IMG/VR virus record: IMGVR_UViG_3300042519_004024
Span: 149,925-213,924 of that record
Length of the DNA: 64,000 bases
Reading direction: 5' to 3' (one strand)
In this document: piece after piece, positions 34,540 through 63,780 of the stretch
How the letters are laid out: each line of letters starts with the position of its first letter
Position numbering within the stretch: the first letter of the stretch is position 1
Notes under the pieces: generated by a model
Databases searched by the model: none
Told to the model about the DNA's origin: nothing
Seen by the model: only the letters and a program-made list of their open reading frames with translations
Translations under genes and position numbers: made by a program

Positions 34540-34550
34540 TATTTATAGTT

Positions 34551-49390: not shown

Positions 49391-49391
49391 T

Positions 49392-50021
49392 ATGGGAACA
49401 GCAGAAGATTTAATGCAAAGACTTGCAGTATCAAAAAAAATAATGGAAAGATCCGAACAAATTAAAAGTGTGGACACAAGAAAAATAAATACACCTATGG
49501 TTGAAGAATTTGAATCTGTAAACGCAACTTATAACCTACCACCTGAATTAATGTCTGAACAGACACAACAAAAACCGTTACACGATCCATCAAAACCATT
49601 AGATGAAAACAGAATATTAAGTTCAAAGTTACCTGATGAAATAAAAAGGTTAATGATTGAGCAACCAATAGTCCAACCAGGTTCGATGAATGGTTCGGTA
49701 AGTATATCAGATGAAGTAATACAAGGAGCACAAAGATTAATGAATATGGGTATAGATAAAACAACACCAAAACCAACCCAAAGAGTAAATGAGGTTATTG
49801 ATGCTACCCCCCCTTCAAAAAGTAATATTAATGTTTCAGAAATTAAAAATATGATAAGAGACGTTGTTAGAGACACGGTAAGAGATGTCATTAGAGAAGA
49901 ATTAAAAGAAGCAGGAATGCTTGTTGAATCAACAACTAATTCTAATGAGGTATTACAATTTAAAGTTGGTAATCATTTATTTGTTGGGAAAGTAACAAAA
50001 GTTAAAAAATTAGAAAAATAA
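49392..50021 (+). CDS. Hypothetical, possible prohead core protein
   Basis: IRDVVRDTVRDVIREELKE repeat; C-terminal FKVGNHLFVGKV. Confidence 0.55.
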   Translation: MGTAEDLMQRLAVSKKIMERSEQIKSVDTRKINTPMVEEFESVNATYNLPPELMSEQTQQKPLHDPSKPLDENRILSSKLPDEIKRLMIEQPIVQPGSMNGSVSISDEVIQGAQRLMNMGIDKTTPKPTQRVNEVIDATPPSKSNINVSEIKNMIRDVVRDTVRDVIREELKEAGMLVESTTNSNEVLQFKVGNHLFVGKVTKVKKLEK

Positions 50022-50041
50022 AAATTGAGTATCGTCGATTT

Positions 50042-50072
50042 AATCCACCCCAAAAAGGTGGATTTTTTGTTT
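50042..50072 (+). terminator. Intrinsic terminator
   Basis: AATCCACC-loop-GGTGGATT followed by TTTTGTTT. Confidence 0.8.
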
Positions 50073-50104
50073 TATTTATATTATAATTTAATAAAAGTTT
50101 ATAT

Positions 50105-51316
50105 ATGAGTAAAATCAAAGTATTAGTATTACCTTCAGATAAAACAGGTGTTGGTAAATTTAGAAGTGTCGATCCACATGTAATGTTACAAAATCTTTAT
50201 CCTGACGATTTTCATGTCGATATTGATTATGAACCAAAAATAAATGATGTTAATTATTGGAAACAATATCAGATAGTTCATTTTCACAGAAGTATTGGAC
50301 ATGACTATGATATGGCGGTTCAAATTATTCAGATGTTAAATAACATGGGAATAGTAACCATTATGGATTTAGATGATTATTGGTTACCAACAAAAGAGCA
50401 CCCTATTCATCAATTGATTTTACAAAATAAAATAAATCAAAAAATAATGGCGAACTTAAAAGTTGCTGGATATGTAACAACAACAACTTCTCTATTCGCT
50501 AAGGAAATTGAAAAACTTAATAAAAATGTTTTTGTTTTACCAAATGCGATTAATCCTAACGAACCACAGTTTAAGGCAAACACAGAACCGTCAGATAGAA
50601 TGAGATTTGGTTGGCTTGGTGGTTCATCACACTTACATGACTTAAAACTTTTAGACGGCACCTTTAACAGATTAAATAGTTTAAAAGATAAGTTTTCAGT
50701 TTATCTATGTGGATTTGATACAAGAGGTACGGTAACTGAAGTAAACAAACAAACGGGAGAACAAAAACAAAGACCAATTAAACCTGAAGAAACTGTTTGG
50801 GCAAGATATGAAGAAATATTCACAGATAAGTATAGATTAGTTACTAACGAACAAAAAGATGAACTAATAAAATTCAAAGAAGGTGATCTTGTTAACCCTA
50901 ACTTCCCAACATATAATCGTATTTGGACTAAACCTGTTACAAGTTACGCAGCAAATTATAGATGGTTTGACGTATCTTTAGCACCTATTAAAAATCATAT
51001 TTTTAACAGAGTAAAATCACAATTAAAAGTTATTGAAGCAGGTTTTTATAAGAAAGCGATTATTGCATCAAATGTGGGTCCTTACACAATAGATTTAAAA
51101 CACTCACTTAAAAATGGTGAATTTACTGATGGTAACGCACTTTTAGTTGATGAGGTTAGAAGTGGTGATTGGGCTAAGTATATGAAAAAATTAATAGATA
51201 ACCCTAATTGGGCACAAGACTTAGGAGAAAGACTATACGAAACGGTAAAAGATAGATACGATTTAAATATCGTAACAAAAGAAAGAGCAGAACTATATAA
51301 AACACTTATAAAATGA
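50105..51316 (+). CDS. GT-B glycosyltransferase (GT4-like)
   Basis: MDLDDYW, GWLGGSSHLHDL, DVSLAP, KSQLKVIEAG..IIASNVGPY. Confidence 0.85.
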   Translation: MSKIKVLVLPSDKTGVGKFRSVDPHVMLQNLYPDDFHVDIDYEPKINDVNYWKQYQIVHFHRSIGHDYDMAVQIIQMLNNMGIVTIMDLDDYWLPTKEHPIHQLILQNKINQKIMANLKVAGYVTTTTSLFAKEIEKLNKNVFVLPNAINPNEPQFKANTEPSDRMRFGWLGGSSHLHDLKLLDGTFNRLNSLKDKFSVYLCGFDTRGTVTEVNKQTGEQKQRPIKPEETVWARYEEIFTDKYRLVTNEQKDELIKFKEGDLVNPNFPTYNRIWTKPVTSYAANYRWFDVSLAPIKNHIFNRVKSQLKVIEAGFYKKAIIASNVGPYTIDLKHSLKNGEFTDGNALLVDEVRSGDWAKYMKKLIDNPNWAQDLGERLYETVKDRYDLNIVTKERAELYKTLIK

Positions 51317-52014
51317 TAAACATACCTATAACTAAAATTTTATTTTTGGACATCGAGACTGTTGGTGGTTGTCCTGATTACGAATCGTGCATAAGATTTA
51401 ATCCTGAACTTGCGGAACAATTTGAAAAGTATTTTGATTGGTTTCAAAAAAGGTTTCCTGAAGATAATGGTTTAGATAAAGATGAGGTGTTCGTTAAAAG
51501 ATCAGCACTTGTTCCTGAATTTGCAAAAATTATTTGTGTATCTATGGCATTTGTAATGGATAACGGGGAAGTTAAAAAACAAACATTTTCTGGTGATAAT
51601 GAAAAAGAACTTTTAACACAAGTAAGATCACTTCTTGATAGATGTCACAAATTAGACTTTTATCTTTGCGGACATAATCTAAAGAATTTTGATATTCCTA
51701 TGATGGCAAAAAGAATGATTATAAATGGAATTATGCCGTCAAAACTATTACCATCTTACGACACTAAACCTTGGGAGGTTAAAGCAATAGACACTAAAGA
51801 AATTTGGCAGTACGGTGCATACACATCTATCGGTTCCCTTGATTTAGTTTGTTCAACAATGGGGATACCAACACCTAAAGATGGTGAAGTAACTGGAGAC
51901 AAAGTACATCATTCGTATTGGGTAGAACAAAAATTAACACAAATTTCAGAATATTGTGAAAAAGATGTTGATGTTCTAATACAATTCATAAAAAAATTAA
52001 AAGACTTAAAATAA
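51313..52014 (+). CDS. Stand-alone 3'-5' exonuclease (PolB-exo-related, DEDDy)
   Basis: FLDIETV, GHNLKNFDIP, YCEKDV. Confidence 0.88.
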   Translation: MINIPITKILFLDIETVGGCPDYESCIRFNPELAEQFEKYFDWFQKRFPEDNGLDKDEVFVKRSALVPEFAKIICVSMAFVMDNGEVKKQTFSGDNEKELLTQVRSLLDRCHKLDFYLCGHNLKNFDIPMMAKRMIINGIMPSKLLPSYDTKPWEVKAIDTKEIWQYGAYTSIGSLDLVCSTMGIPTPKDGEVTGDKVHHSYWVEQKLTQISEYCEKDVDVLIQFIKKLKDLK

Positions 52015-52625
52015 TGATTGAAAAATTTAAAGATATTAAACAGCAAATGGATATTTTAAAAGGTTTGCAAGAAAATGTAAACGAACTTGATATGTCAAAC
52101 CCTGAGGCTTTATTAGAGTCAATGGGTGTAAGTATGGAAGACATGGAAAACCATTTTCTTCAAATGAATAGTCAAATTGAGTTTGAAAAAATTCCTCTAC
52201 AATATGTTAATGAAAGTGAGAATAAAAATCCTGAATACGCATATGAATCGGACTCAGGTTTTGATTTAAGATCAACTGAAGACATTTGGATTCAAGCAAA
52301 CAATAGAAAACTAATACCAACAGGTTTAAGATTTGATATTCCTGAAGGTTACGAAATACAAGTTAGAAGTAAAAGTGGATTGGCACTAAAACAAGGATTA
52401 ATGGTTTTAAATTCTCCGGGTACTGTAGATAGTGGTTACCAAGGTGAGGTTAAGGTAATCATGTTTAACACAACAAATGAAAGAATTAAAATAGAAAAAG
52501 GGCAAAAAATTGCACAGGCAGTTTTATGTCCTGTTATGTGCGGAAAATGGGTTAATTTAGTTAAAGTTGAGGAGATAGAAGAAAAGGATAGAAACGATAA
52601 AGGATTTGGGAGTACAGGATTATGA
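52014..52625 (+). CDS. dut: Trimeric dUTPase with N-terminal extension
   Basis: SGFDL, RSKSGLA, GTVDSGYQGEV, KIAQ, RNDKGFGSTG. Confidence 0.93.
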   Translation: MIEKFKDIKQQMDILKGLQENVNELDMSNPEALLESMGVSMEDMENHFLQMNSQIEFEKIPLQYVNESENKNPEYAYESDSGFDLRSTEDIWIQANNRKLIPTGLRFDIPEGYEIQVRSKSGLALKQGLMVLNSPGTVDSGYQGEVKVIMFNTTNERIKIEKGQKIAQAVLCPVMCGKWVNLVKVEEIEEKDRNDKGFGSTGL

Positions 52626-54046
52626 TAACAATAGGATTTTCAACTAGAAAACATAATCAAGAGTATATTGATTATCTACAAAAAACTTCAATGTATAAAG
52701 AAGTACAAATCATTGAGAAGGTTAATAATGGTGAAAAGTCTTTATCACAAGTTTATAATGAAATATTAAACGAATCTGAAAATGATATTGTTGTTTTATG
52801 TCACGATGATTTAGAAATAGACACCAAAAATTGGGGTGATAAGGTACTTAAACATTTTCAAAAAACACCTGAGTATGGTATTTTAGGTTTAGCAGGAACC
52901 AAATATTTGGACACAAACGCTAAATGGTGGGAAGTATTTAACACTATGTATGGTGTTGTTAATCATAAACACGAAGGTAAAAAATGGACTAGTACATACT
53001 CAAAAGACATAGGTAATAAATTAGAAGATGTTGTTTTAGTTGATGGGTTGTTTATTGTGGTAAACAAAAAAAATATTAAACATAATTTTGATGAGTCTAT
53101 TGATGGGTTTCACTTTTATGATTTAGGTTTTTGTTTACCTAACTTTTTAGACAATGTAAAAGTTGGGGTTATGTTTGACGTTAGAGTAACCCATCTTTCA
53201 ATTGGACAAACTAACCAACAATGGGAAGATAATAGGGCTAAATTTGCGGAAAGATATATGGATAGTTTACCAATAGACATTAATAAAAAAGACGAATCAG
53301 AAACTTTTATTTTTGTTCACGATCAAGATTTAATTATTGAATTTGAAAATAAAAAGAAATTTTCTAACCTATATAATTACAGATACGTTTTTTTAGGTAG
53401 TCGTCCAATTGATAAATTAGAAAATTTTAATAATGTCATTATCGCAAGAGACTATGAGGGTAATTTAGAACAATACCCATTGTTTACTTCATATACCGGA
53501 TGGTTCTGTCTTTGGAAAAATAATTTAATAAAAACAAAATATGTAAATTTATTTGAGTACGATACTCTTTTAAATAAAAATATAGATCAGTTTCACACCA
53601 AACTTTATAATAAAAATGTAGAAATGATTGGTTACGTACCTTTCCCAATATCACATTTTCAGTTTGTTCAAAATCCTGAATGGAACCAACACATTTTACC
53701 AATTATAAAAGAAGTAAACAAAATAGATTTAATTAGTTATTACTCTAAAGTACTTCAAAAAAATCCAAATGCGGTTTGGTCCTCAACTTCAAACACAACA
53801 TTCAGAACAGACATTTTCAATGAGTACATGAAATGGTTCGAACCAATAGCAGATAGGATTAAAGAAACAAAAACTTGTGGACATGCGCATGAAAGATCAA
53901 TCACATACTTTTCACATATAAAAAATAAAAAAATGTTAATTACAAATAACATTTTAAAACATCTACAATTAGATTCACACAAAACACAAGGACATAATGT
54001 AGATATGGATGTAAGTCTTAATAAACTTTATCAAAACATATTTTAA
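52622..54046 (+). CDS. Two-domain glycosyltransferase (N-terminal GT2-like plus second GT-like domain)
   Basis: VLCHDDL, GILGLAG, VDGLFI, GFHFYD; C-terminal NLFEYD and HAHERS. Confidence 0.75.
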   Translation: MITIGFSTRKHNQEYIDYLQKTSMYKEVQIIEKVNNGEKSLSQVYNEILNESENDIVVLCHDDLEIDTKNWGDKVLKHFQKTPEYGILGLAGTKYLDTNAKWWEVFNTMYGVVNHKHEGKKWTSTYSKDIGNKLEDVVLVDGLFIVVNKKNIKHNFDESIDGFHFYDLGFCLPNFLDNVKVGVMFDVRVTHLSIGQTNQQWEDNRAKFAERYMDSLPIDINKKDESETFIFVHDQDLIIEFENKKKFSNLYNYRYVFLGSRPIDKLENFNNVIIARDYEGNLEQYPLFTSYTGWFCLWKNNLIKTKYVNLFEYDTLLNKNIDQFHTKLYNKNVEMIGYVPFPISHFQFVQNPEWNQHILPIIKEVNKIDLISYYSKVLQKNPNAVWSSTSNTTFRTDIFNEYMKWFEPIADRIKETKTCGHAHERSITYFSHIKNKKMLITNNILKHLQLDSHKTQGHNVDMDVSLNKLYQNIF

Positions 54047-54705
54047 TGAATTATTTAAGTTATAGTTTATGGGGAGATAACCCACTATACAATGTCGGAT
54101 CAATTAGAAACTCAGAACAGGTAAAAGAAATTTATCCTGATTGGCAAATGATTTTATATTACGACAATAGCGTACCGTCAGAAACTATTAATTCTCTTTT
54201 GAATAACAATGTAATTTGTTTAGATATGTCTAATAGTGGTATACATGGTTCTTTTTGGAGATTTTTAGCTTCAGATATTGAAGATGCTGAATACGTTTGT
54301 TTTAGAGATTGTGACTCTAGATTATCGAACAGAGAGTTTCTGGCGGTACAAGATTGGATTGAGAGCAAAAAGACATTACACGTTATGAGAGATCACCCTG
54401 CTCATGTAATACCTTATGGTATAAGTGAACCAGGAATTCTTGCGGGTATGTGGGGAATAAAGGCTAAAACGATACCTATGACAGATTTAGTTAATAAATT
54501 TAATCTTGGCAGGACTTTAGAATATGGTCACGATCAAGTTTTTTCTAAAACCATATACCAAATATTTTTAAACGATCGTTGTACACACGATGAATTTTAT
54601 GAAAAAAAACCATTTCCTATTAAAAGAGAAAATGGTAGATTTGTTGGTGAACGAATTAGTATAAACGAAACTCCGGTAACAGAAGATTATAAAATATTAT
54701 TATGA
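54046..54705 (+). CDS. Putative GT-A glycosyltransferase
   Basis: SYSLWG..Y..G..N, WRFL, FRDCDSR, HVMRDHPAH, ILAGMWG, DQVF. Confidence 0.6.
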   Translation: MNYLSYSLWGDNPLYNVGSIRNSEQVKEIYPDWQMILYYDNSVPSETINSLLNNNVICLDMSNSGIHGSFWRFLASDIEDAEYVCFRDCDSRLSNREFLAVQDWIESKKTLHVMRDHPAHVIPYGISEPGILAGMWGIKAKTIPMTDLVNKFNLGRTLEYGHDQVFSKTIYQIFLNDRCTHDEFYEKKPFPIKRENGRFVGERISINETPVTEDYKILL

Positions 54706-55421
54706 AAATAGATTACGCAATTGTTAGTACAGATAATAACCAAATGTACTCTGAATTTTGGGAACCTGTAAAAAAACTTTGGTTTAATTTAGTCGGTATT
54801 AAACCCTTATTAGTGAAGATATCCGACAATAATGATGTTATTGAATATGATGATTGCGTTATTCACAATTTTAAAAAAATTGATGGGATTAATACGGGAT
54901 TTCAGTCACAAATAGCCAGAATGTATGTCACAAAATATTATCAAAATAGTGTATGTCTGACATCAGATATTGATATGTTACCATTATGTAAAAATTATTT
55001 TGTTAAAGATATTGAAACTATTAATAATGATAATTTAGTTATTTTTAGTTCTGACGCATACCAAGGAGTTGTTAGATACCCAATATGTTACAATGCGGCA
55101 AAAGGAAAGGTATTCAATGACATTATGAAATTTGAAGACACTTTTGAGGAGTACTGTATAAAATTAAATGATATGGGATTTGGTTGGGATACGGATGAGT
55201 TATATTTTGGAAAAATGGTTAACTTATATGAAAATCAATCAATAATTACTAAATTAAATCGTGGCTGGGAGTATGGAAGAGCAAAAAAAAGAATAGATAG
55301 AGTTTATTGGACATATGATGAAAACGAATTAAAAACTCAAAATTATGTAGATTCTCACTCTTTACGACCATATTCAAAATACAAAAATGAAATAGATAAA
55401 TTAATAAATTTTTTAATATGA
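54702..55421 (+). CDS. Putative GT-A nucleotide-sugar transferase
   Basis: SQIARMY, TSDIDMLP (DxD), YPICY, WDTDE, RIDR, DSH. Confidence 0.6.
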   Translation: MKIDYAIVSTDNNQMYSEFWEPVKKLWFNLVGIKPLLVKISDNNDVIEYDDCVIHNFKKIDGINTGFQSQIARMYVTKYYQNSVCLTSDIDMLPLCKNYFVKDIETINNDNLVIFSSDAYQGVVRYPICYNAAKGKVFNDIMKFEDTFEEYCIKLNDMGFGWDTDELYFGKMVNLYENQSIITKLNRGWEYGRAKKRIDRVYWTYDENELKTQNYVDSHSLRPYSKYKNEIDKLINFLI

Positions 55422-56065
55422 GAATATTAATTTTAGTTCTTTCATATGACGATTCAGGAATATATACTGAATTTTATAAAACACAAAAACAAACGTGGGA
55501 TAGTTTACCCGTTGAAGGTGTTGAAACATATTACTATTTTGGTAATAATAATGAAAATATAATAGTCGGTAATAATATTTTAACAGATGTCCCTGAGAGT
55601 TTAATAAATTGTGGTAATAAATCTATAGAAGCCTTTAAACTTATTTCTAATATGGATTTTGATTTTGTTTTTAGAACAAATTCAAGTTCGTATATTGATA
55701 AGAATCTATTAAAATTACATTTAGAAAATAAACCCAAAAACAATTTTTATTCTGGAATTTTAGGGAATCATTTTGGTATACCTTTTTGCTCAGGATCCGG
55801 GTTCGTTCTATCTAAAGACTTAGTGCATTTATTAATAGACAATAAAGAAAAATTAGATTTTAGTTTGATTGACGACGTTTGTTTTGGAAAATTTCTTTCT
55901 TCTAATAATATTCCTTTAATAAATTCATATAGATTTGATTTAACTTATAATACAAATGAAATTGATGAGGGATTTTTTCACTATAGACTTAAAACTAATA
56001 ATAGAATAAACGACATAAATAATATGATATTAATACACAAAAAAAAATTAAAATGGAAAAAATAA
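55418..56065 (+). CDS. GT31 (galactosyltransferase/Fringe)-like protein
   Basis: QTW, K...AFK, FDFVFRTNSSSYID, FCSGSGFVLSKDLV, IDDVCFG. Confidence 0.65.
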   Translation: MRILILVLSYDDSGIYTEFYKTQKQTWDSLPVEGVETYYYFGNNNENIIVGNNILTDVPESLINCGNKSIEAFKLISNMDFDFVFRTNSSSYIDKNLLKLHLENKPKNNFYSGILGNHFGIPFCSGSGFVLSKDLVHLLIDNKEKLDFSLIDDVCFGKFLSSNNIPLINSYRFDLTYNTNEIDEGFFHYRLKTNNRINDINNMILIHKKKLKWKK

Positions 56066-56637
56066 ATTTAATATACGAAAAACAATGTTCAACACCTTCA
56101 GATATAAATGAACATCTACCAACATTACTTAAATATGCTAATGAATGTGAACACATAACAGAAATGGGTGTTAGGTGGGTATCATCTACTTGGCCACTAC
56201 TTTTATCTAACCCAAAAAAAATGATTAGTTACGATATTGTTAGACATCCTAAAATTGAGGAGGTAATTGATTTATCTAAAAATTACAACATAGATTATCA
56301 ATTTATTCAATCGGATGTTTTAACTATAGAAATAGAAGAGACGGAATTATTATTTATAGATACATTACACACATATAATCAATTAATCTGTGAGTTGGAT
56401 ATTCATTCTGACAAATGTTCAAAATATATCATTTTACACGACACCACAACTTTTGGGGATGTCGATGAAAATGTATATAGTCACGCAAGTCCTCTAATTA
56501 TAAATGAATCAAAAAACAAACAAGGTTTATGGACAGCAGTGTTAGATTTTTTAGAATCGGAAAAAGGGAACCTTTGGAAAGTAAAAGAAAGATTTACAAA
56601 TAATAATGGATTAACTATATTAGAAAGAAAAAAGTAA
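56053..56637 (+). CDS. Class I SAM-dependent methyltransferase (Methyltransf_24-like)
   Basis: EMGVRWVSST, LLFIDTLHTY, IILHDT, NNNGLTIL. Confidence 0.8.
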   Translation: MEKINLIYEKQCSTPSDINEHLPTLLKYANECEHITEMGVRWVSSTWPLLLSNPKKMISYDIVRHPKIEEVIDLSKNYNIDYQFIQSDVLTIEIEETELLFIDTLHTYNQLICELDIHSDKCSKYIILHDTTTFGDVDENVYSHASPLIINESKNKQGLWTAVLDFLESEKGNLWKVKERFTNNNGLTILERKK

Positions 56638-57341
56638 TGTTAACAATTCATACTTTAACATATAACGAAGAATTAATGATAGAATTTTTTGTAAATCATT
56701 ATAGAAAATTATTTCCAAATTGTATTATTAAAATATATGATAATTATTCTACCGATAATACTGTAAATATTGCAAAAAATTTGGGGTGTGAAATTTTTTA
56801 TTATGACTCAAATAATAATTTGTCTGATTCTAAATATTTAGAGATAAAAAATAACTGTTGGAAAAATTCAAATACCGATTGGGTTATTGTTTGCGATTGT
56901 GATGAATTAATTCAAATAAACCAAGAAGAGTTAATTAATGAGGATAAAAACGGAACTACCCTTTTTAAATTTAAAGGTTATCATATTATGAATACAGATG
57001 ATGAATTAAATTTAAATAATTTATCATTTGGGTTTCCTGATACTATGTATGATAAAATTTTATTATTTAATAAGTCAAAAATTACTGATATAAATTATGA
57101 ACCGGGTTGTCATTCGGCATCTCCAATAGGAAGTGTAATATATTCTAAAAATATTTATAATCTTTTACATTACAAATATTTAGGAGTTAACTATACTGTT
57201 GATAGATATAAAATGTTTGCGGAAAGAATATCAGACGAAAATTTAAAATTTGGATGGGCAATTCATTATTTAAAAAAAGAAAACGAAATAGTTGAGGATT
57301 ACATAAAAAATAAAAAAAATTTAATAAAAGTTAAAAATTAA
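56637..57341 (+). CDS. GT2-like glycosyltransferase
   Basis: YNEE, YDNYSTDNT, DWVIVCDCDE, PGCH, LLHYK. Confidence 0.8.
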   Translation: MLTIHTLTYNEELMIEFFVNHYRKLFPNCIIKIYDNYSTDNTVNIAKNLGCEIFYYDSNNNLSDSKYLEIKNNCWKNSNTDWVIVCDCDELIQINQEELINEDKNGTTLFKFKGYHIMNTDDELNLNNLSFGFPDTMYDKILLFNKSKITDINYEPGCHSASPIGSVIYSKNIYNLLHYKYLGVNYTVDRYKMFAERISDENLKFGWAIHYLKKENEIVEDYIKNKKNLIKVKN

Positions 57342-57342
57342 A

Positions 57343-57906
57343 ATGAAAATAAACGAAAGAGGATATTGGGAAACCTTTGATTCTGAAGGACATATTTTTG
57401 ATTCTTCATTATCAAATAAAGTGATTGAATTTTCAATCGAAAATAATGTAAAAACATTTTGTGATTTTGGATGTGGAATGGGTGATTATGTATCAAAATT
57501 ATTAGACAATGGGTTTATATGCGAAGCTTACGATGGAAATCCGAACACAGAAAAATTAACTAATGGAATTGCTAAAACTTTAGATTTATCAATTCCATTT
57601 GAATTAAATAAAAAATTTGATTGTGTTTTAAGTTTTGAAGTTGGGGAACATATACCTTCTGAATACGAGAGCGTTTTTATTAATAACTTGTGTAATCACT
57701 CTGAAAATTTAATTATTGTGAGTTGGGCGGTAGAAGGACAACCAGGTCACGGACACGTAAATTGTAGAAATAATGATTATATTATAAAGGAGTTTGAAAA
57801 AAGAGATTTTATTTATGATGAAATCAATAGTACATCTCTACGTAATAGTCATTCAAATGCTTGGTGGTTTAAAAACACAATAATGGTATTTAAAAAAAAT
57901 AAATAA
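57343..57906 (+). CDS. Class I SAM-dependent methyltransferase
   Basis: DFGCGMG, FDCVLSFEVGEHIP, GQPGHGHVNC. Confidence 0.85.
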   Translation: MKINERGYWETFDSEGHIFDSSLSNKVIEFSIENNVKTFCDFGCGMGDYVSKLLDNGFICEAYDGNPNTEKLTNGIAKTLDLSIPFELNKKFDCVLSFEVGEHIPSEYESVFINNLCNHSENLIIVSWAVEGQPGHGHVNCRNNDYIIKEFEKRDFIYDEINSTSLRNSHSNAWWFKNTIMVFKKNK

Positions 57907-57907
57907 T

Positions 57908-58474
57908 ATGGAACATTTTTATAAAAAAATAGATGGATGGTTTAATATGGAAAACGAATATTCAGAATTATTAAACTTTTGCAATGATGGTTCTAATTTT
58001 GTTGAACTTGGAGCATGGAAAGGTAAAAGTACTTGTTATGCGGTTGTTGAACTATTAAACAATAATAAAAAAATAAATTTTTTTACTGTTGACACATTTG
58101 AAGGAGTGACTGCAGGATCAGATTTGAATGAAGTAAATGCTTACCTTAAAGAAGATAAAAATATACTCGATCAATTTATAAAAAACACTGAACCGATTAA
58201 AGAAAATTTTAAATATTTTATTTATGATAGTGCAACAGCATCTAATTTGTTTGAGGACTCGTCGGTTGATGCGATATTCATCGATGCGGGACATTCTTAT
58301 GAATCGGTTAAAAAAGATATAGAATCTTGGTTTAATAAAATGAAACCAGACAGTATTATGTCCGGTCACGACTACTGTGAATCTTGGCCTGGAGTTATTA
58401 AAGCAGTTGATGAATTTTTTGGTAAACCGGATAAGGTTATTAATAGATGTTGGTTTAAATACGTAAAAAAATAA
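57908..58474 (+). CDS. Class I SAM-dependent methyltransferase (Methyltransf_24-like)
   Basis: VELGAWKGKST, VDTF, IFIDAGHSYE, GHDY, WPGV..AVDE. Confidence 0.85.
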   Translation: MEHFYKKIDGWFNMENEYSELLNFCNDGSNFVELGAWKGKSTCYAVVELLNNNKKINFFTVDTFEGVTAGSDLNEVNAYLKEDKNILDQFIKNTEPIKENFKYFIYDSATASNLFEDSSVDAIFIDAGHSYESVKKDIESWFNKMKPDSIMSGHDYCESWPGVIKAVDEFFGKPDKVINRCWFKYVKK

Positions 58475-58478
58475 TAAC

Positions 58479-59510
58479 ATGAAAAAAATATTAATTTTAG
58501 GTGGTGGTGGATTCATAGGAGGACATTTATCTAAAAGATTATATGATGAAGGAAACTTTGTTAGGGTTGTTGATATTAAACAACATGAATATTTTAAACA
58601 AGAAGAATATTGTACAGAATTTATATTAGGTGATTTAAGAGATCAGAACTTAGTTTCAAGAGTTATGTTCGCACCGAACCAAACATCGTTAAATGATATT
58701 GAAAACTCATTTGATGAGGTATATCAGTTAGCTGCAGATATGGGTGGTGCTGGATATATTTTTACAGGGGAGAATGATGCAAATGTTATGCACAATTCAG
58801 CACTTATTAATTTAAATGTTGTTGATTATGCAACAAAATTTAATGTAAAAAAAGTATTTTATTCTTCATCCGCATGTATGTACCCTGAACATAATCAGCT
58901 TAATCCTGAAAATCCTAACTGTGAAGAATCTTCAGCATACCCAGCGAATCCCGATAGTGAATACGGTTGGGAAAAGTTATTTAGTGAAAGATTATACCTC
59001 TCATTCAAAAGAAATTACGGACTAAACGTAAGAATTGCAAGGTTCCATAATATCTTTGGGCCTTACGGAACTTGGGATGGTGGTAAGGAGAAGGTCCCTG
59101 CAGCGATGTGTAGAAAAGTTGCTGAATCAGATACAGAAATTGAAGTGTGGGGTGACGGTAAACAAACAAGATCCTTTCTTTATATAGATGAATGTATAGA
59201 AGCGGTATTAAGATTAATGGATAGTAATTTTGTTGGCCCGGTTAACATAGGTTCTGAAGAAATGGTAACAATAAATCAATTGGCTCAAATGGCTATTGAT
59301 ATTTCAGAAAAGAATATTAAAATTAAAAATATACAAGGAGACGAATTTCAACTCAAGTACGGTTTTAAATGTCCTGTTGGTGTGAGGGGTAGAAATTCAG
59401 ACAACAAGCTTTATGAAACAAAAATTGGTTGGTCAGTTTCTGAACCACTAATCGAAGGTATGAAAAAAACATACGAATGGATTAATAAACAAGTATTTTT
59501 AAATAAATGA
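58479..59510 (+). CDS. NAD-dependent epimerase, GDP-mannose 3',5'-epimerase-like
   Basis: GGGGFIG, LAADMGG, SSACMYPE, YGWEK, RFHNIFGPYGTWDGGKEK.PAAMCRK, GVRGRNSDN. Confidence 0.88.
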   Translation: MKKILILGGGGFIGGHLSKRLYDEGNFVRVVDIKQHEYFKQEEYCTEFILGDLRDQNLVSRVMFAPNQTSLNDIENSFDEVYQLAADMGGAGYIFTGENDANVMHNSALINLNVVDYATKFNVKKVFYSSSACMYPEHNQLNPENPNCEESSAYPANPDSEYGWEKLFSERLYLSFKRNYGLNVRIARFHNIFGPYGTWDGGKEKVPAAMCRKVAESDTEIEVWGDGKQTRSFLYIDECIEAVLRLMDSNFVGPVNIGSEEMVTINQLAQMAIDISEKNIKIKNIQGDEFQLKYGFKCPVGVRGRNSDNKLYETKIGWSVSEPLIEGMKKTYEWINKQVFLNK

Positions 59511-60241
59511 CAAGAAGAAAACCCCAACCTCAAAACGAAGAAAGTGAGTCTAAACCTTTTTCAAAAAAAGATTTTATAAATTCCGTCATAAAGAAAAAAG
59601 TTAAAAATAAATTTTTAACAGAAAATCAAGAACATTATTATAACCTTTTAAAAAATAATCAAATCACTATTTGTTCAGGACCCGCAGGTGTAGGTAAATC
59701 GTACATAGCAATGAAAGCTGCGGTAGACTTATTAATGGATACTAATAATTCATATGAAAAATTAGTTATTGTTCGTCCAGCAGTTGAAGCGGAAGAAAAA
59801 CTTGGATCTTTACCTGGTAATCTTGAAGAGAAATTAGATCCATATATTTTTCCATCTTATTACTTATTAAATAAAATTATAGGTAAAGATGCTCGCGAAA
59901 AATTAAAAGATGCCGAAATTATAGAAGTTTTTGCATTAGCATATATGAGAGGTATGAATATAGACAATACAATTTTAATTTTTGAAGAATCTCAAAATTC
60001 AAGTCCAAATCAAATGAAATTACTATTGACAAGAATAGGGTTCAATAGTAAATTTTTTATATCGGGAGATATCGAACAAACTGATAGGTATAAAGATAAA
60101 AAACATTCAGGACTTTACGACGCAATACAAAGATTTAAAAATATACATGATGTCGGTGTTTTTGAATTTGGTGACGGTGATGTTGTTAGAAATCCACTGA
60201 TAAGTAAGATATTAAAAAAATATGATGAGAATAGGGATTGA
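59507..60241 (+). CDS. phoH: PhoH-family ATPase
   Basis: GPAGVGKS, RPAVE, LGSLPG, YMRG, EESQN, LTRIG, GDIEQTD, VVRNPL. Confidence 0.92.
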   Translation: MTRRKPQPQNEESESKPFSKKDFINSVIKKKVKNKFLTENQEHYYNLLKNNQITICSGPAGVGKSYIAMKAAVDLLMDTNNSYEKLVIVRPAVEAEEKLGSLPGNLEEKLDPYIFPSYYLLNKIIGKDAREKLKDAEIIEVFALAYMRGMNIDNTILIFEESQNSSPNQMKLLLTRIGFNSKFFISGDIEQTDRYKDKKHSGLYDAIQRFKNIHDVGVFEFGDGDVVRNPLISKILKKYDENRD

Positions 60242-60872
60242 GATTAACGGAGTTTTAAGGGACACTATTGGGAAGTTTACTCAATTGTATGAAAAACATA
60301 TGATTGATGAAAAAGAAGACGGTAACAAAACTTACGAGCTGGATATGTCGGGTAATACAGAGGAATTAATCCCTAAAGAAGATTTTGAATACAGGATTTT
60401 AAGTGATGTAACGTCATTAAATTTAATGGATCATTTTAGATTTAATGATGAAAATGAATTATACTCTTTTATGTACGAAGATTTTGCAATGCAAATTTTT
60501 GGTCACGCAGGATCATCAGAAACTTTTTCATTTAATGACTTAAATGAATTTTATTTAAAATATAGAGATGAAAATGAATTGTTAATAGTTTCTGATGAAA
60601 TGGGTAAATCAAAACCCGCATCTTTATTCTTTCTTTCAAAGTTCGGATGTTTAGTAGAAAAAATAAAATTTTACTCAAATACCACAATTAATTCAATGTG
60701 GGATGAAATAGACATTTTACTTACGGCAAATCCTTCCTTATTATTAGAAAAACCAAATAATAAGATTGTCGTTAAATATAACACACCTTATAATAAAAAT
60801 GTCAATTGTGAATATGAGATTAGTTCATTGAAGGAGTTTGACGAAATTTTACAAAAAAACAAATTATGTTAA
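60222..60872 (+). CDS. 5'(3')-nucleotidase-like HAD fold protein with degenerate catalytic motifs
   Basis: MRIGIEINGVLRD (vs IGIDIDGVL), DILLTANP (vs lIDD), TPYN. Confidence 0.55.
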   Translation: MMRIGIEINGVLRDTIGKFTQLYEKHMIDEKEDGNKTYELDMSGNTEELIPKEDFEYRILSDVTSLNLMDHFRFNDENELYSFMYEDFAMQIFGHAGSSETFSFNDLNEFYLKYRDENELLIVSDEMGKSKPASLFFLSKFGCLVEKIKFYSNTTINSMWDEIDILLTANPSLLLEKPNNKIVVKYNTPYNKNVNCEYEISSLKEFDEILQKNKLC

Positions 60873-61150
60873 AATTTTTAGGAGAGAATTATTACCTAGA
60901 CATTAATGAGCTAGAGAAACAGGTTAGTTATGAAAAATCAGTACTACCTATAACTGGAGATACTGAGAACTCGGACCAACAAATTAGTGTTACAAGATAT
61001 GACACATTTAAAAGTCTAATTGAGGTATTACTAACTGAGAGAGAAGAGTTAGATGAAACTTTAGGTATTCATGGAGCGAAAGATTTAACAATACCATTTA
61101 AAATCGCATTCAATACTTTATTAATAAACAATATATTAAAAACACTTTAA
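60866..61150 (+). CDS. Hypothetical protein
   Basis: 94-aa ORF overlapping upstream stop. Confidence 0.7.
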   Translation: MLKFLGENYYLDINELEKQVSYEKSVLPITGDTENSDQQISVTRYDTFKSLIEVLLTEREELDETLGIHGAKDLTIPFKIAFNTLLINNILKTL

Positions 61151-61154
61151 AAAA

Positions 61155-62219
61155 ATGGAATTAGAAAAAATTCAAAAACTTGAGAAGTCATTAGAGAACC
61201 TAATTAATAAATCCGCAAGAATTTATTTTTTAGTACAGGACACAAAAGGTAACCCAAAAGCCGGAATAAAATACATTTATGACATGGCATTAACATTAAA
61301 AAATAATGGGTTTAACTCTATTATTATTCACGAAACGAAAGAATATAGTGGAGTTGCTGAGTGGTTAGGGGAGAAATACATGGAATTACCTCACCAACCA
61401 ATAGAAAATCAAAATTTGGCAATTTCACCTGAAGATTTTATTATTATACCTGAAATCTACGCACACGTAATGGAGCAATTAAAAAATTTCCCGTGTGGTA
61501 AAATTGTTTTGTGTCAAGCATACGACCAAATACTTGAAACGTTACCTCCAGGGATTACTTGGGCTCAGTATGGTTTTATTAAATGTATTACAACTTCTGA
61601 GACACAAAAAAAATACATTTCAGAAATTATGAAAAATGTAAATATCGATATGGTTGAACCATATATTTCAGAACATTTTACAAGAAAAGAAAAACCATCA
61701 AAGCCAATCATTTCTATTCACACAAGAGAACCTAGAGATACTGCCAAAATTATAAAAACTTTTTATTTGAAGTTCCCACAATATAGATGGATAACATTTA
61801 GAGATATGAGGGGTATTAAACAAGAAGATTTTTCTAAATTTTTGAAAGATTCATACGTTTCAGTTTGGGTTGATAACGAGTCGGCATTTGGAACATATCC
61901 TTTAGAGTGTATGATAACGGGGACACCGGTAATTGGTAAGGTGCCTAACTTAAAACCTGAATGGATGAACGAAGAGAATGGTGTTTGGACATACCAATTT
62001 AATGAGATTGTTGACATTATTGCTAACTATACACAAAATTGGTTAGAGGATAATATCTCTGATGAACTTTATAATAAAATGTATGAAACAGGTATGAAAT
62101 ATTCACAAAAAGACATGTTTGAAACATCAGTATTAGGTTTGTTTAATGAGTATTTTGAAAAAAGAACAAATTCGTTTTCTGAACAATTAGAAAAAATAAA
62201 AGTATCTGAAGAAAAATAA
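61155..62219 (+). CDS. GT-B glycosyltransferase (GT4-like)
   Basis: DFIIIPE, ESAFGTYPLECMITGTPVIG. Confidence 0.75.
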   Translation: MELEKIQKLEKSLENLINKSARIYFLVQDTKGNPKAGIKYIYDMALTLKNNGFNSIIIHETKEYSGVAEWLGEKYMELPHQPIENQNLAISPEDFIIIPEIYAHVMEQLKNFPCGKIVLCQAYDQILETLPPGITWAQYGFIKCITTSETQKKYISEIMKNVNIDMVEPYISEHFTRKEKPSKPIISIHTREPRDTAKIIKTFYLKFPQYRWITFRDMRGIKQEDFSKFLKDSYVSVWVDNESAFGTYPLECMITGTPVIGKVPNLKPEWMNEENGVWTYQFNEIVDIIANYTQNWLEDNISDELYNKMYETGMKYSQKDMFETSVLGLFNEYFEKRTNSFSEQLEKIKVSEEK

Positions 62220-62224
62220 AAAAA

Positions 62225-63028
62225 ATGGAAAAATTTAATGTATCAGTAATATTACCAATAAACTCATCAGCACATAGAGGTTTCGATGATTTATTTGACA
62301 GAGCAATAAAATCTTTATCAATACAAAGTTTACCAGTTAATGAACTAGTGATTGTACATTCAGGTGAAGATTCTCTAAAAAACTTTTTATCAAGTTATGA
62401 TTTTAGTGGACTAACCACAAACATAGTACAAAATGATGGTGATTTTGATTTTTGTACACAAGTTAATTTAGGTGTTGAAAACGCCAAAAGTGAATGGATT
62501 AGTGTGTTAGAATTTGATGATGAGTATTCAAGTATTTGGTTTAAAAATGTTAAAAGATTTGCCGATTCTTATCCTGAAGTAGATGCATTCCTTCCTTTGG
62601 TTGTCGATACTGACGATAAAGGTATGTTCGTAGGGTTTACAAATGAAGCCACGTTCGCAGCAAGTTTAAATACGGAAATCGGGTATCTAACTAACGATGT
62701 TTTACTTTCATACCAAAACTTCCAAACTAGTGGGATGGTTATTAAAAAATCAACATTTAAAGATAATGGAGGATTTAAAGCATCAATGAAACTTACTTTT
62801 GTTTATGAACTACTATTAAGACTTACTTATAATTCTACAAAAATAATGACTGTACCAAGAATTGGTTACAAACATATGAACCTTAGAGAAGGATCTATTT
62901 TTTGGAATTACAAAAATGGTGAAGAAAAAATTTCAGATAATGAGGTATCTTTTTGGATCGATTCAGCAAAAAAAGAACATTTCTTCACAAATGATAGAAA
63001 TATAAAATATGTAGCAGAACAACAGTAA
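62225..63028 (+). CDS. GT2-like glycosyltransferase
   Basis: VSVILP, AIKSL..Q, NLGVENAKSEWISVLEFDD, GGF. Confidence 0.8.
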   Translation: MEKFNVSVILPINSSAHRGFDDLFDRAIKSLSIQSLPVNELVIVHSGEDSLKNFLSSYDFSGLTTNIVQNDGDFDFCTQVNLGVENAKSEWISVLEFDDEYSSIWFKNVKRFADSYPEVDAFLPLVVDTDDKGMFVGFTNEATFAASLNTEIGYLTNDVLLSYQNFQTSGMVIKKSTFKDNGGFKASMKLTFVYELLLRLTYNSTKIMTVPRIGYKHMNLREGSIFWNYKNGEEKISDNEVSFWIDSAKKEHFFTNDRNIKYVAEQQ

Positions 63029-63030
63029 TA

Positions 63031-63780
63031 ATGTTTCTATCCGATGAAAGCAGTGGGAATACATATGAAACGAATAAGACGGTAAAAAAACAAAAAAGTA
63101 ATAACTATTTTGATGTCCGTGAAGAAGAGGCTGTTAGAGATTATATCTTAGCAGAAACAAAAGAAGAAAAAGAAAAAATTTATAATGAATATCTTCGTAT
63201 GCCGTTAGACAAAATGATTGAGTCTATCATACGAAGATATAAATTATATAGAAAAGACATGGAATACATTGATGTCCACCATGATACCCATTCTTTTTTA
63301 ATGACAAAAGTGGATAAGTTTAAGCCAGCAAAAAATAAAAAGGCGTATTCTTATTTTGGTACAATATGTAAAAATTATTTAATGGGTCAAATTCTAAAAG
63401 ACCAAAAAGAAACAAACAGAAAAATTTCATACGAGGATATATCGGCAACTTTAGAAAATCGTCCTGATATGGTTTATTATTTAGAGTTTGAAAAAATAGA
63501 TGCCGAAAGAATAATTGATGTTTTTTTAGTTGACTTAAGAGCTTATGTTTATGAAAACACTTTAGTTGAAAATGAATTTAAATTAGGACAAGCACTGATT
63601 GAGTTGTTTGATAATTACGGTAACATTTTTATAGGTAATGATAATAATAAGTTCAATAAAAATATCGTACTCTTATCCTTAAGGGAAATGACTAATATGA
63701 ACACAAAAGAGATTAGGACGTTTTTAAAGAAATACAAATTACTATATTTACAGACTATAAAAAAAATACATAATCAATAA
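63031..63780 (+). CDS. Late-transcription sigma factor, T4 gp55-like
   Basis: NYF...AV..Y; KFKPAKNKKAYSYFGTICKNYL resembles the gp55/sigma region-2 'kFdP.k...aFaYFt.I..n' motif. Confidence 0.7.
   Translation: MFLSDESSGNTYETNKTVKKQKSNNYFDVREEEAVRDYILAETKEEKEKIYNEYLRMPLDKMIESIIRRYKLYRKDMEYIDVHHDTHSFLMTKVDKFKPAKNKKAYSYFGTICKNYLMGQILKDQKETNRKISYEDISATLENRPDMVYYLEFEKIDAERIIDVFLVDLRAYVYENTLVENEFKLGQALIELFDNYGNIFIGNDNNKFNKNIVLLSLREMTNMNTKEIRTFLKKYKLLYLQTIKKIHNQ

What the first reader, a model, noticed from the sequence alone, without database searches (positions are those of the whole stretch)
50105..63028. Phage-encoded glycan factory: ~8 glycosyltransferases, 3 methyltransferases and an L-sugar epimerase in one operon ending in the late sigma factor
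Seen: 16 co-oriented genes, many translationally coupled (ATGA/TAATG overlaps at 51313, 52014, 52622, 54046, 54702, 55418, 56637, 59507), encoding two GT4-like, three GT2-like, one GT31-like and two further DxD GT-A-like proteins, three SAM methyltransferases and a GDP-Man 3,5-epimerase-like enzyme. No hydroxymethylase/thymidylate-synthase homologue, flippase, Wzy or membrane-anchored GT is evident in the window. Established: DNA glucosylation needs only 1-2 GTs plus a base hydroxymethylase; chloroviruses build O-methylated capsid glycans with their own GTs/MTases; some mycobacteriophages glycosylate virion proteins. Inference: a soluble pathway that builds a multi-residue, methylated glycan, most plausibly on the virion, in the style of a giant-virus glycosylation system. 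Co-location with dUTPase and an exonuclease keeps DNA hypermodification as an alternative.
Basis: partly seen in the sequence, partly recalled or inferred. Interest (0 to 1): 0.85.

Follow-up and report, generated by a model that had tools for sequence, protein, structure and literature searches.

The report
Swappable sugar-chain gene island in phage
A large freshwater T4-like phage carries a block of soluble sugar-adding and sugar-methylating enzymes whose middle part is exchanged like a cassette between nearly identical phages; what the sugar chain is attached to (most likely virion proteins, possibly DNA) is still unproven.

Summary
Window 50105-63780 is one co-oriented, largely overlapping gene block that starts after a conserved terminator. 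It has 17 ORFs up to 63028, not 16. Seven glycosyltransferases are supported and an eighth is unverified. Two methyltransferases are supported and a third is unverified. There is a clear GDP-mannose 3,5-epimerase, plus an exonuclease, dUTPase, PhoH and a weak gp55-like ORF. No protein has a membrane helix.

Comparison with 47 related loci shows a conserved frame around a hypervariable island. The frame is GT-B, exonuclease, dUTPase and a GT-A domain on the left; PhoH, two unknowns, GT-B, GT2 and gp55-like on the right. Twenty-two complete islands give 15 architectures and 96 gene families, including fucosyltransferases, aminosugar enzymes, O-methyl- and pyruvyl-transferases. Genomes 96-99% identical in the flanks carry different cassettes. 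None of 489 island proteins is a flippase, polymerase, transporter or priming transferase.

No thymidylate-synthase-like, TET/JBP or dCTPase gene appeared in about 176 kb of this genome, which totals at least 300 kb.

Best reading (0.42): a cytoplasmic pathway builds a methylated, L-galactose-containing glycan on a phage-borne acceptor, most likely virion protein. DNA hypermodification and host-envelope remodelling remain live rivals. Similar clusters are already described in large cyanophages and "moraphages", with function untested.

The parts
47517..50021 (+). Conserved left-frame genes c10 (DUF3721), c8, c5, c9 and c6, function unknown. A separate short transcription unit upstream of the GT block.
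   Evidence: Present in 34-37 of the related loci in the same order. Only Pfam hit is DUF3721.
50042..50064 (+). Intrinsic terminator (8-bp stem plus T-run) that separates c6 from the GT block.
   Evidence: A stem-loop plus T-run is kept in relatives with different, compensating stem sequences.
50105..51316 (+). GT-B glycosyltransferase (403 aa), part of the conserved frame.
   Evidence: PHROG 7162 6e-44. Pfam Glyco_trans_1_4 2e-3. Present in 39 loci. 26% identity to paired GTs gp104/105 of Phapecoctavirus.
51313..52014 (+). 3'-5' exonuclease (PolB-exo-like), conserved frame.
   Evidence: PF10108 2.3e-14. PHROG 25228 2.4e-35.
52014..52625 (+). dUTPase-family enzyme with a 70-aa N-terminal extension, conserved frame.
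   Evidence: PF00692 4.9e-27 and DCD-like 7.7e-8.
52622..54046 (+). Two-domain protein. The N-terminal GT-A (PF13712, residues 14-212) is conserved in all loci. The C-terminal 250-aa domain has no known family and is exchanged in relatives for GT4, GT2 or GT4 plus pyruvyltransferase domains.
   Evidence: The AF2 model was poor (pLDDT 55).
54046..54705 (+). GT-A, GT8-like glycosyltransferase (D88-C-D90 after strand 4). The last conserved gene before the swappable cassette.
   Evidence: AF2 pLDDT 85.9, pTM 0.86. Foldseek PDB hits to glycogenin, Skp1 alpha-GalT, LgtC and TarP at 6e-7 to 1e-5. BFVD hits in giant viruses at 1e-15. 587 unannotated homologs.
54743..58450 (.). Swappable cassette of 3.7 kb. 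It is replaced by a different 5.0-kb gene set in genomes whose flanks are 96-99% identical.
   Evidence: blastn of L001, L002 and L004 against the window. Gene tables.
54702..55421 (+). Unknown 239-aa protein with an invariant hydrophobic-strand-D-I-D motif. Possible GT-A, unverified.
   Evidence: No Pfam, NCBIfam or PDB hit. 484 unannotated homologs.
55418..56065 (+). GT31-like GT-A (215 aa).
   Evidence: PF01762 1e-6, 29.1 bits. Shared with the alternative cassette at only about 70% nucleotide identity.
56053..56637 (+). Unknown 194-aa protein. A methyltransferase-like motif seen by eye is not confirmed.
   Evidence: No hits. No profile link to the methyltransferase families.
56637..57341 (+). 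GT2 glycosyltransferase.
   Evidence: PF13704 7e-11 and PF00535 2e-8.
57343..57906 (+). Class I SAM methyltransferase.
   Evidence: PF13489 2.7e-8.
57908..58474 (+). SAM O-methyltransferase, TylF-like.
   Evidence: PF13578 5.8e-19. hhalign links it to the TylF family x62 (x62 identified).
58479..59510 (+). GDP-mannose 3',5'-epimerase, which makes GDP-L-galactose and GDP-L-gulose.
   Evidence: PDB 2c59 2.6e-90 over the full length. 62-75% identical to Bacteroidota enzymes.
59507..60241 (+). PhoH-like ATPase, the first gene of the conserved right frame.
   Evidence: PF02562 2.2e-63.
60222..61150 (+). Two conserved unknowns (216 aa and 94 aa).
   Evidence: No hits. Conserved in 20-23 loci.
61155..62219 (+). 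GT-B glycosyltransferase related to the soluble Agt/AmGGT glucan-elongating family.
   Evidence: Profile A1 against PDB 8xsg, 7.5e-14. PMC12159676.
62225..63028 (+). GT2 glycosyltransferase.
   Evidence: PF00535 3.4e-6, 27.5 bits.
63031..63780 (+). Possible T4 gp55-type late sigma factor (weak).
   Evidence: The only PDB hit of profile A2 is T4 gp55 (7d7c_F), E = 0.21. No annotated phage homolog.

Best explanation
The block is a cytoplasmic glycan-assembly island of a freshwater T4-like jumbo phage that probably infects Bacteroidota. It is built like a bacterial O-antigen locus but lacks every membrane component.

Proposed organisation:
- Conserved 'inner' enzymes are kept across the whole lineage: GT-B 50105, the GT-A domain of 52622, GT8-like 54046, GT-B 61155 and GT2 62225.
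- A central cassette, together with the C-terminal domain of 52622, is exchanged by recombination in the conserved flanks.

Proposed pathway in this window:
- GDP-mannose 3,5-epimerase supplies GDP-L-galactose (or GDP-L-gulose).
- Seven or eight soluble GTs assemble an oligosaccharide.
- Two or three SAM methyltransferases O-methyl-cap it.

Inference on the acceptor: the inner enzymes are conserved whatever the outer cassette and there is no export machinery. The acceptor is therefore taken to be phage-borne and cytoplasmic, most likely surface-exposed virion protein. Candidates are the G/S/T/P-rich insertion of the 624-aa gp23, the 27% Ser/Thr GEVED protein next to it, or the fibre proteins upstream.

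Shown: the enzyme families, their solubility, the cassette swapping and the epimerase identity. Inferred: the order of steps, the sugar composition and the acceptor.
For: - Enzyme inventory.
- Own transcription unit after a conserved terminator.
- Conserved frame plus variable island in 47 loci. Twenty-two complete islands give 15 architectures and 96 families.
- Cassette swap between genomes with 96-99% identical flanks.
- Island repertoire typical of heteropolysaccharides. It includes GT10/GT11 fucosyltransferases, DegT aminotransferases, UDP-Glc dehydrogenase, acetyltransferase, FkbM, TylF and rhamnosyl O-methyltransferases, pyruvyltransferase and cytidylyltransferase.
- None of 489 island proteins has a credible membrane helix.
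- No ThyS, TET or C5-MT family within 10 kb in any locus scanned, nor in about 176 kb of this genome.
- The nearest cultured homologs of the conserved GT-B are in Phapecoctavirus, a group reported as exceptionally restriction-sensitive; PMC8594841.
- GT-B 61155 belongs with the soluble Agt/AmGGT enzymes. ApAgt elongates protein-linked glucose; PMC12159676.
- The GT8-like 54046 has structural neighbours that act on protein-linked glycans (glycogenin, Skp1 GalT) and close relatives in giant viruses. A bacterial homolog carries an extra N-terminal region and is annotated as a SPINDLY-family OGT.
Against: - No glycosylated protein has been shown.
- The GT block is 7-17 kb from the capsid genes, not adjacent as in mycobacteriophages.
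- It is translationally coupled to an exonuclease and a dUTPase, and it sits beside a gp55-like gene, where T4 has its alpha-glucosyltransferase.
- It has no T4-type late promoter (TATAAATA), whereas neighbouring structural genes do.
- GT8-like and GT-B enzymes also act on DNA in other phages (bioRxiv 10.1101/2023.12.21.572611).
- About 140 kb of the genome was not examined.
- It is hard to name the selective force that would diversify a virion glycan in lake water.
Confidence: 0.42

Rival explanations
1. DNA hypermodification. The conserved GTs put a first sugar on a hydroxylated or hydroxymethylated pyrimidine in phage DNA and the cassette enzymes extend it. Cassette turnover is then driven by host nucleases and glycosylases that recognise particular DNA sugars.
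For: - The block is translationally coupled to a 3'-5' exonuclease and a dUTPase-family enzyme, and it is next to PhoH and a gp55-like gene. In T4 the alpha-glucosyltransferase gene also lies beside gene 55 (own knowledge).
- Transcription is not of the late type.
- Phage DNA glycans of up to three sugars made by GT-A and GT-B enzymes with epimerases are established (bioRxiv 10.1101/2023.12.21.572611; PMC13326640).
- An arms race with defence systems explains diversifying selection naturally.
Against: - No ThyS-like, 5mYOX/TET, C5-MT, MazG-type dCTPase or dNMP kinase was found within 10 kb in any of 47 loci, or in about 176 kb of this genome. That includes the helicase-UvsX-SSB and DNA-polymerase neighbourhoods, where T4 keeps gene 42 and beta-gt. 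Such pathways are usually clustered (Pyle et al.).
- The islands encode up to 15 genes with fucosyl-, pyruvyl-, acetyl- and O-methyl-transferases and use a GDP-sugar. This is far more than any known DNA glycan.
- There is no sequence similarity to T4 AGT or BGT.
- Homologs of the conserved GT-B sit in restriction-sensitive phages (PMC8594841).
Confidence: 0.22
2. Remodelling of the host envelope. The soluble GTs and methyltransferases act at the inner face of the membrane on the host's undecaprenyl-linked O-antigen, capsule or O-glycan intermediates. The altered glycan is exported by host machinery. The result is blocked superinfection, or progeny that are not lost on cell debris. This is the usual reading of 'LPS genes' in large cyanophages.
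For: - The gene repertoire is that of bacterial surface-polysaccharide loci.
- The epimerase is 62-75% identical to Bacteroidota genes. Bacteroidota make fucosylated and methylated O-glycans (own knowledge).
- Comparable clusters in P-SSM2, S-SCSM1 and S-SCSM2R are interpreted this way (PMC12801897).
- Most O-antigen GTs are themselves soluble or peripheral.
Against: - There is no priming transferase, flippase, polymerase, ligase or ABC transporter in any of 489 island proteins.
- The inner GTs are conserved across a deeply diverged phage lineage (DUT identity down to about 57%), whereas host glycans differ between strains. This fits a phage-borne acceptor better.
- The lineage-specific GT families (54046, 54702, 61155) are absent from the bacterial neighbourhoods of the epimerase.
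Confidence: 0.2
3. The product is a soluble metabolite, a glycolipid or a storage/secreted oligosaccharide. Alternatively the genes are a loosely selected collection of auxiliary genes with no common product.
For: The closest solved relative of GT-B 61155, AmGGT, elongates free oligosaccharides rather than glycopeptides (PMC12159676). No acceptor has been identified.
Against: Tight translational coupling, a conserved frame and O-antigen-like modular turnover over hundreds of related contigs argue for one coordinated pathway under selection.
Confidence: 0.08

Closest known systems
'LPS' or cell-wall synthesis/modification gene clusters of large T4-like cyanophages (P-SSM2, S-SCSM1, S-SCSM2R, S-SRM01)
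   Same: They are large myoviruses. They carry many soluble GTs (GT2, GT10, GT11, GT25 families), nucleotide-sugar epimerases, methyltransferases and a cytidylyltransferase in one region. The acceptor is untested. S-SRM01 gp306 is a homolog of ORF 54046 and lies inside a 17-gene cluster of this kind (PMC12801897).
   Different: The phage lineage differs and the host is probably Bacteroidota. The conserved GTs have no detectable homolog in cyanophages. The cassette structure with a fixed frame is shown here.
Giant-virus glycosylation systems (chlorovirus capsid N-glycans; Megavirinae fibril glycans with clade-specific gene clusters)
   Same: Virus-encoded soluble GTs, some multi-domain, occur together with sugar-nucleotide enzymes and O-methyltransferases, and gene sets differ between clades. 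ORF 54046 has 25-30% identical relatives in mimivirus-like genomes, Aureococcus anophagefferens virus and an iridovirus-like genome (LCIVAC01).
   Different: This is a bacterial virus. Glycosylation of the virion has not been shown. There is no homology to the characterised chlorovirus enzymes that I could test.
Phage DNA glycosyl-hypermodification clusters (T4 a-gt/b-gt; RB69/DLP3 poly-arabinosyl-5-hydroxycytosine; TET/ThyS-associated GT clusters)
   Same: A T4-like phage with GT-A and GT-B enzymes plus a sugar-nucleotide enzyme, placed among DNA-metabolism genes and next to a gp55-like gene.
   Different: No base-hydroxylating enzyme, dCTPase or kinase was found. The enzyme repertoire is much larger and more decorated. 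The donor is a GDP-sugar.
Bacterial O-antigen and capsule loci
   Same: Conserved flanks surround a hypervariable centre made of GTs, sugar-modifying enzymes and capping methyltransferases, with exchange by recombination in the flanks.
   Different: All membrane steps are missing: priming transferase, Wzx/Wzy or ABC transporter, and ligase.
Mycobacteriophage virion O-glycosylation (Freeman et al. 2023, cited in PMC12619734)
   Same: Phage-encoded soluble GTs that modify structural proteins in the cytoplasm.
   Different: There, 1-4 GTs lie directly beside the capsid gene. Here there are 7-8 GTs plus modifiers, 7-17 kb away and in a non-late transcription unit.
'Moraphages' (PMC12619734)
   Same: Freshwater jumbo phages of 200-307 kb with predicted Bacteroidota hosts. 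The core genome contains four GT orthogroups, PhoH, ClpA, T4-like structural genes and a peptidase. This genome has four frame GTs, PhoH, a ClpA/B-like ATPase and a weak Pfam match to Peptidase_M42 on one ORF.
   Different: Membership was not tested by phylogeny. That paper does not describe a variable island.

Membership tests
Phage DNA glycosyl-hypermodification gene cluster | A thymidylate-synthase homolog (hmC, hmU or 5hoC synthase) or a 5mYOX/TET (with or without a C5-MT) encoded with the GTs | tested here: not met
   No such Pfam family in the window, within 10 kb of the island in 47 loci, or in the representatives of island families that were scanned.
Phage DNA glycosyl-hypermodification gene cluster | The same enzymes, plus a dCTPase and a dNMP kinase, anywhere in the genome | tested here: inconclusive
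   About 176 kb was seen with no hit. A P-loop SKI-like kinase lies next to a lone GT2 in L219. About 140 kb is unseen.
Phage DNA glycosyl-hypermodification gene cluster | GT related to a proven DNA glycosyltransferase | tested here: not met
   No PDB sequence hit to T4 AGT or BGT for 50105 or 61155. Fold-level resemblance to TarP or GT8 is not specific.
Virus-encoded virion glycosylation system | Soluble virus-encoded GTs together with sugar-nucleotide and methylating enzymes | tested here: met
Virus-encoded virion glycosylation system | A structural protein that carries the glycan | not testable with these tools
   Only candidates can be named: the gp23 insertion, the GEVED protein and the fibre proteins.
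Bacterial Wzx/Wzy- or ABC-dependent surface polysaccharide locus | Priming phosphoglycosyltransferase, flippase or ABC transporter, polymerase | tested here: not met
   No credible transmembrane protein among 489 island proteins or in window ORFs 47517-63780.
GDP-mannose 3',5'-epimerase (ORF 58479) | Full-length similarity to characterised GME | tested here: met
   PDB 2c59, 2.6e-90, residues 3-340. Catalytic residues were not inspected.
T4 gp55 late sigma factor (ORF 63031) | Significant similarity to gp55 | tested here: inconclusive
   The only PDB hit is gp55 but E = 0.21 over 65 residues. There is no annotated homolog. TATAAATA motifs do precede several structural genes.
GT-A fold glycosyltransferase (ORF 54046) | Rossmann-like GT-A topology with D-x-D after strand 4 | tested here: met
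GT-A fold glycosyltransferase (ORF 54702) | Detectable GT-A family or fold | tested here: inconclusive
   An invariant D-I-D after a hydrophobic stretch, but no profile or PDB hit.
Moraphage lineage | Marker-gene phylogeny and shared core orthogroups | not tested
   Only gene-content resemblance (PMC12619734).

The most novel reading that the evidence does not exclude
The island writes a strain-specific glycan 'code' on the virion that the phage uses in adsorption. One possibility is that it acts as bait for the glycan-binding outer-membrane uptake systems (SusC/D-type) of its Bacteroidota host. Cassette exchange would then re-target or re-cloak the particle, so host range would be set partly by a sugar the phage makes, not only by its fibre proteins. 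The sugar types (L-galactose, fucose-type, O-methyl) resemble those of algal polysaccharides that Flavobacteria take up.
Probability: 0.07. Interest if true: 0.9.

Novelty: new variant of a known kind. Interest (0 to 1): 0.6.

Why it matters
Multi-GT clusters in large aquatic phages have been noted for twenty years and dismissed as 'LPS genes' without a test. This locus gives the problem a sharper form in three ways:
- It has a fixed set of inner enzymes and an O-antigen-like swappable outer cassette.
- It has no export machinery at all.
- It belongs to an abundant lake lineage with hundreds of variants. One gene family is shared with giant viruses, and a cultured cyanophage (S-SRM01) carries the same kind of cluster.

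If the acceptor is the virion, tailed phages would carry variable glycan coats comparable to those of giant viruses. That would affect adsorption, grazing, particle stickiness and phage serology. If the acceptor is DNA, these would be by far the most complex DNA glycans known. Either result can be reached with ordinary chemistry on one cultured phage.

Tried and rejected
- Nucleotide search of the block against GenBank phages found no match.
- tblastn of the 474-aa GT and of GT-B 61155 against phages found no match.
- PDB sequence or profile searches gave nothing usable for 50105, 54046, 54702, 56053, 60222 and the C-terminal domain of 52622.
- NCBIfam added only weak names.
- Local all-against-all hhalign of island families linked only the methyltransferase families. 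hhalign of 54046 against 54702 was not significant.
- The AF2 model of the 474-aa protein was too poor to search (pLDDT 55).
- The sigma-70 promoter scan was uninformative in this AT-rich DNA: 101 sites against 104 expected.
- Rfam gave no hit in the window.
- One exact-protein look-up failed because the called start differs.
- I walked the genome for a hydroxymethylase and covered about 176 kb without a hit, but I could not finish.
- Rejected: wholesale capture of the cassette from the bacterial loci that hold the closest epimerases. Neighbours there share only generic sugar genes at 30-50% identity.

Full report
**What the window is.** The 64-kb window is about 30% G+C and has no tRNA. It encodes a gp18-like tail sheath, gp19-like tube, gp25 and other baseplate proteins, a family-B DNA polymerase, DnaB-like helicase, UvsX-like recombinase, SSB, a ribonucleotide reductase and an Fe/Mn superoxide dismutase.
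- It is identical to the last 64 kb of IMG/VR contig 3300042519_004024 (213.9 kb; JGI contig 224 kb) and overlaps a 128-kb contig that runs 116 kb further.
- Downstream lie gp23, a gp21-type protease, portal, terminase, a ribosomal protein S21 gene and a ClpA/B-like ATPase.
- The phage is therefore a distant T4-like jumbo phage of at least 300 kb from lake metagenomes.
- A Bacteroidota host is likely. The epimerase is 62-75% identical to Flavobacteriales and Saprospiraceae genes, and one phage protein carries a CHU_C (type-IX-secretion) domain.
- Gene content resembles the recently named 'moraphages' (PMC12619734), but I did not test membership.

**The observation.**
- The only intergenic gap nearby (50022-50104) holds a stem-loop with a T-run. 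Relatives keep the hairpin with different, compensating stems. The block therefore starts its own transcription unit.
- There is no TATAAATA in the right orientation before it. That T4 late-promoter motif does sit 19-54 nt upstream of several structural genes, including the fibre-like gene just upstream.
- Seven GTs, two methyltransferases and the epimerase are supported. One more GT (54702) and one more methyltransferase (56053) remain unverified.
- The epimerase is unambiguous: full-length match to plant GDP-mannose 3',5'-epimerase at 2.6e-90. This points to L-galactose or L-gulose in the product.
- ORF 54046 had no family by sequence but folds confidently (pLDDT 86) as a GT-A with D-C-D after strand 4. 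Its PDB neighbours are glycogenin, the Skp1 alpha-galactosyltransferase, LgtC and TarP. Its closest viral relatives include proteins of mimivirus-like genomes, Aureococcus virus and an iridovirus-like genome at 25-30% identity.
- No ORF in the block has a membrane-type hydrophobic segment.

**The main new finding.**
- Looking up the gp55-like protein by exact sequence returned genomes in which the segment between ORF 54046 and the epimerase is different.
- Against L001, the flanks are 96.5% identical up to window position 54742 and 98.6% identical from 58451. Between those points, 3.7 kb is replaced by 5.0 kb. The replacement encodes a hexapeptide acetyltransferase, an FkbM methyltransferase, a GFO/IDH/MocA oxidoreductase and other genes.
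- Only the GT31-like plus 194-aa pair is shared, and at about 70% identity.
- A scan with the 474-aa GT gave 41 more viral loci. I clustered their ORFs. Nearly all share a frame: a fibre-like gene of variable length on the opposite strand, five small unknowns, GT-B, exonuclease, dUTPase, the PF13712 GT-A domain, then a variable island, then (usually) the epimerase, PhoH, two unknowns, GT-B, GT2 and the gp55-like gene.
- Twenty-two islands that are complete on both sides fall into 15 architectures of 6-15 genes (5.5-12.2 kb). Ninety-six gene families occur in the islands. Content turns over far faster than the flanks diverge. For example, at dUTPase 88% identical, the island overlap (Jaccard) is 0.13.
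- The variable part begins inside the 474-aa protein. Its C-terminal domain is replaced elsewhere by GT4, GT2 or GT4 plus pyruvyltransferase domains, and it also occurs as a free-standing protein.
- Island families include GT10 and GT11 fucosyltransferases, GT2, GT25, a GT47-like protein, DegT aminotransferases, UDP-glucose dehydrogenase, an NAD-synthase-like enzyme, FkbM, TylF and rhamnosyl O-methyltransferases, a cytidylyltransferase, BKACE and a homing endonuclease.
- Among 489 island proteins, the only hydrophobic windows above threshold lie in three families of soluble enzymes. There is no flippase, polymerase, transporter or priming transferase anywhere.

**What is the acceptor?** The conserved inner GTs with a variable outer set resemble a core-plus-O-antigen layout. 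Combined with the lack of any export step, this argues for an acceptor that travels with the phage and sits in the cytoplasm, meaning virion protein or DNA.

Evidence against DNA:
- No thymidylate-synthase-like, TET/JBP, C5-MT, MazG or dNMP-kinase family was found in the window, within 10 kb in any locus, or in the roughly 176 kb of this genome I could read. Known pathways usually cluster (bioRxiv 10.1101/2023.12.21.572611).
- The repertoire (fucosyl-, pyruvyl-, acetyl- and O-methyl-transferases, a GDP-sugar donor) far exceeds the mono- to tri-saccharides known on DNA (PMC13326640).
- The nearest cultured homologs of the conserved GT-B are in Phapecoctavirus, a group described as exceptionally susceptible to restriction (PMC8594841).

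Evidence for DNA:
- The block is coupled to an exonuclease and a dUTPase.
- It is not expressed from a late-type promoter.
- It sits beside a gp55-like gene, as T4's alpha-gt does.
- About 140 kb of the genome is unseen.

Leads toward protein, none of which is proof:
- The solved relative of GT-B 61155 belongs to the Agt family, which elongates protein-linked glucose (PMC12159676).
- The fold neighbours of 54046 include enzymes that work on protein-linked glycans.
- A bacterial homolog of 54046 is annotated as a SPINDLY-type OGT.

Candidate acceptors are the G/S/T/P-rich insertion of the 624-aa gp23, the adjacent GEVED protein (27% Ser/Thr) and the fibre-like proteins upstream.

Host-envelope remodelling is the usual reading of similar cyanophage clusters (PMC12801897). 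It is weakened by the total absence of membrane steps and by the conservation of the inner GTs across a deep lineage, but it is not excluded.

**Comparison and novelty.** Multi-GT clusters are already on record for P-SSM2, S-SCSM1, S-SCSM2R and S-SRM01 (PMC12801897), and four core GT orthogroups are reported for moraphages (PMC12619734). In none of these is the function tested. What this analysis adds:
- the fixed frame with a swappable cassette, including swaps between near-identical genomes;
- the complete lack of membrane components;
- the L-galactose-type donor of Bacteroidota origin;
- a GT family shared with giant viruses.

I rate it a new variant of a known kind, of moderate to good interest. 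The acceptor question can be decided with standard chemistry on a cultured relative.

**Verdict.**
- The best explanation is virion-protein glycosylation by a cassette-variable soluble pathway (0.42).
- DNA hypermodification (0.22) and host-envelope remodelling (0.20) are the serious rivals.

Noticed in passing
window 34536-35270 (+): Phage-encoded Fe/Mn superoxide dismutase (Sod_Fe_C 9e-41, Sod_Fe_N 2.5e-22).
   Followed up: no
window 9219-16232 (-) and 16491-22880 (-): Two giant ORFs of 2337 and 2129 aa with essentially no family hits. The second is preceded by a TATAAATA late-promoter motif 19 nt upstream.
   Followed up: no
window 44631-45503 (-) and 45528-47465 (-): Fibre-like genes directly upstream of the conserved frame. 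The 290-aa protein is 26% Ser/Thr with repeats of the type TGGTFNVTG. The 645-aa protein has 18 Cys, a late promoter 38 nt upstream, and lengths of 645-1593 aa in relatives.
   Followed up: partly
L129:4646-4834 (about 15 kb past the window end): Ribosomal protein S21 gene between the portal and prohead-protease genes.
   Followed up: no
L214:4063-6240: A 725-aa protein with PKD and CHU_C (type IX secretion sorting) domains, a Bacteroidota signature inside the phage genome.
   Followed up: no
L219:543-3217: Several otherwise unrelated neighbouring ORFs share the N-terminal leader MNLQEQI(S/N)RIQSMMGL. A P-loop kinase-like ORF has the shorter form MKSMMGL. This may be a targeting or processing signal like the capsid-targeting sequence of T4 internal proteins.
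   Followed up: no
L219:2141-4709: A further lone GT2 (234 aa), far from the island, sits between a SKI-like P-loop kinase (211 aa) and an LpxH-like metallophosphoesterase (237 aa).
   Followed up: partly
L013:6569-7468 and L038 (cluster x43): A NUMOD3 homing-endonuclease gene is inserted between c6 and the conserved GT-B in some relatives.
   Followed up: no
window 53282-54043 (C-terminal half of ORF 52622): A 250-aa domain with no known family. It also occurs free-standing and fused to PF13712, GT2 or GT15 domains in metagenomic proteins. Invariant residues include H-D, E-Y-D, G-H..E-R and H..H.T.
   Followed up: partly
L023-L047, intergenic region upstream of the conserved GT-B: In the more distant relatives the terminator is missing. 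A conserved motif cTTATA(T/C)TTT lies about 20-25 nt before the ATG and is reminiscent of the Bacteroidota -7 promoter element TAnnTTTG.
   Followed up: no
L216 (GenBank CAKLQH020000005.1): A record filed as 'Acinetobacter phage MD-2021a' looks like bacterial chromosome (recN, type II secretion, coaE, rlmB).
   Followed up: no
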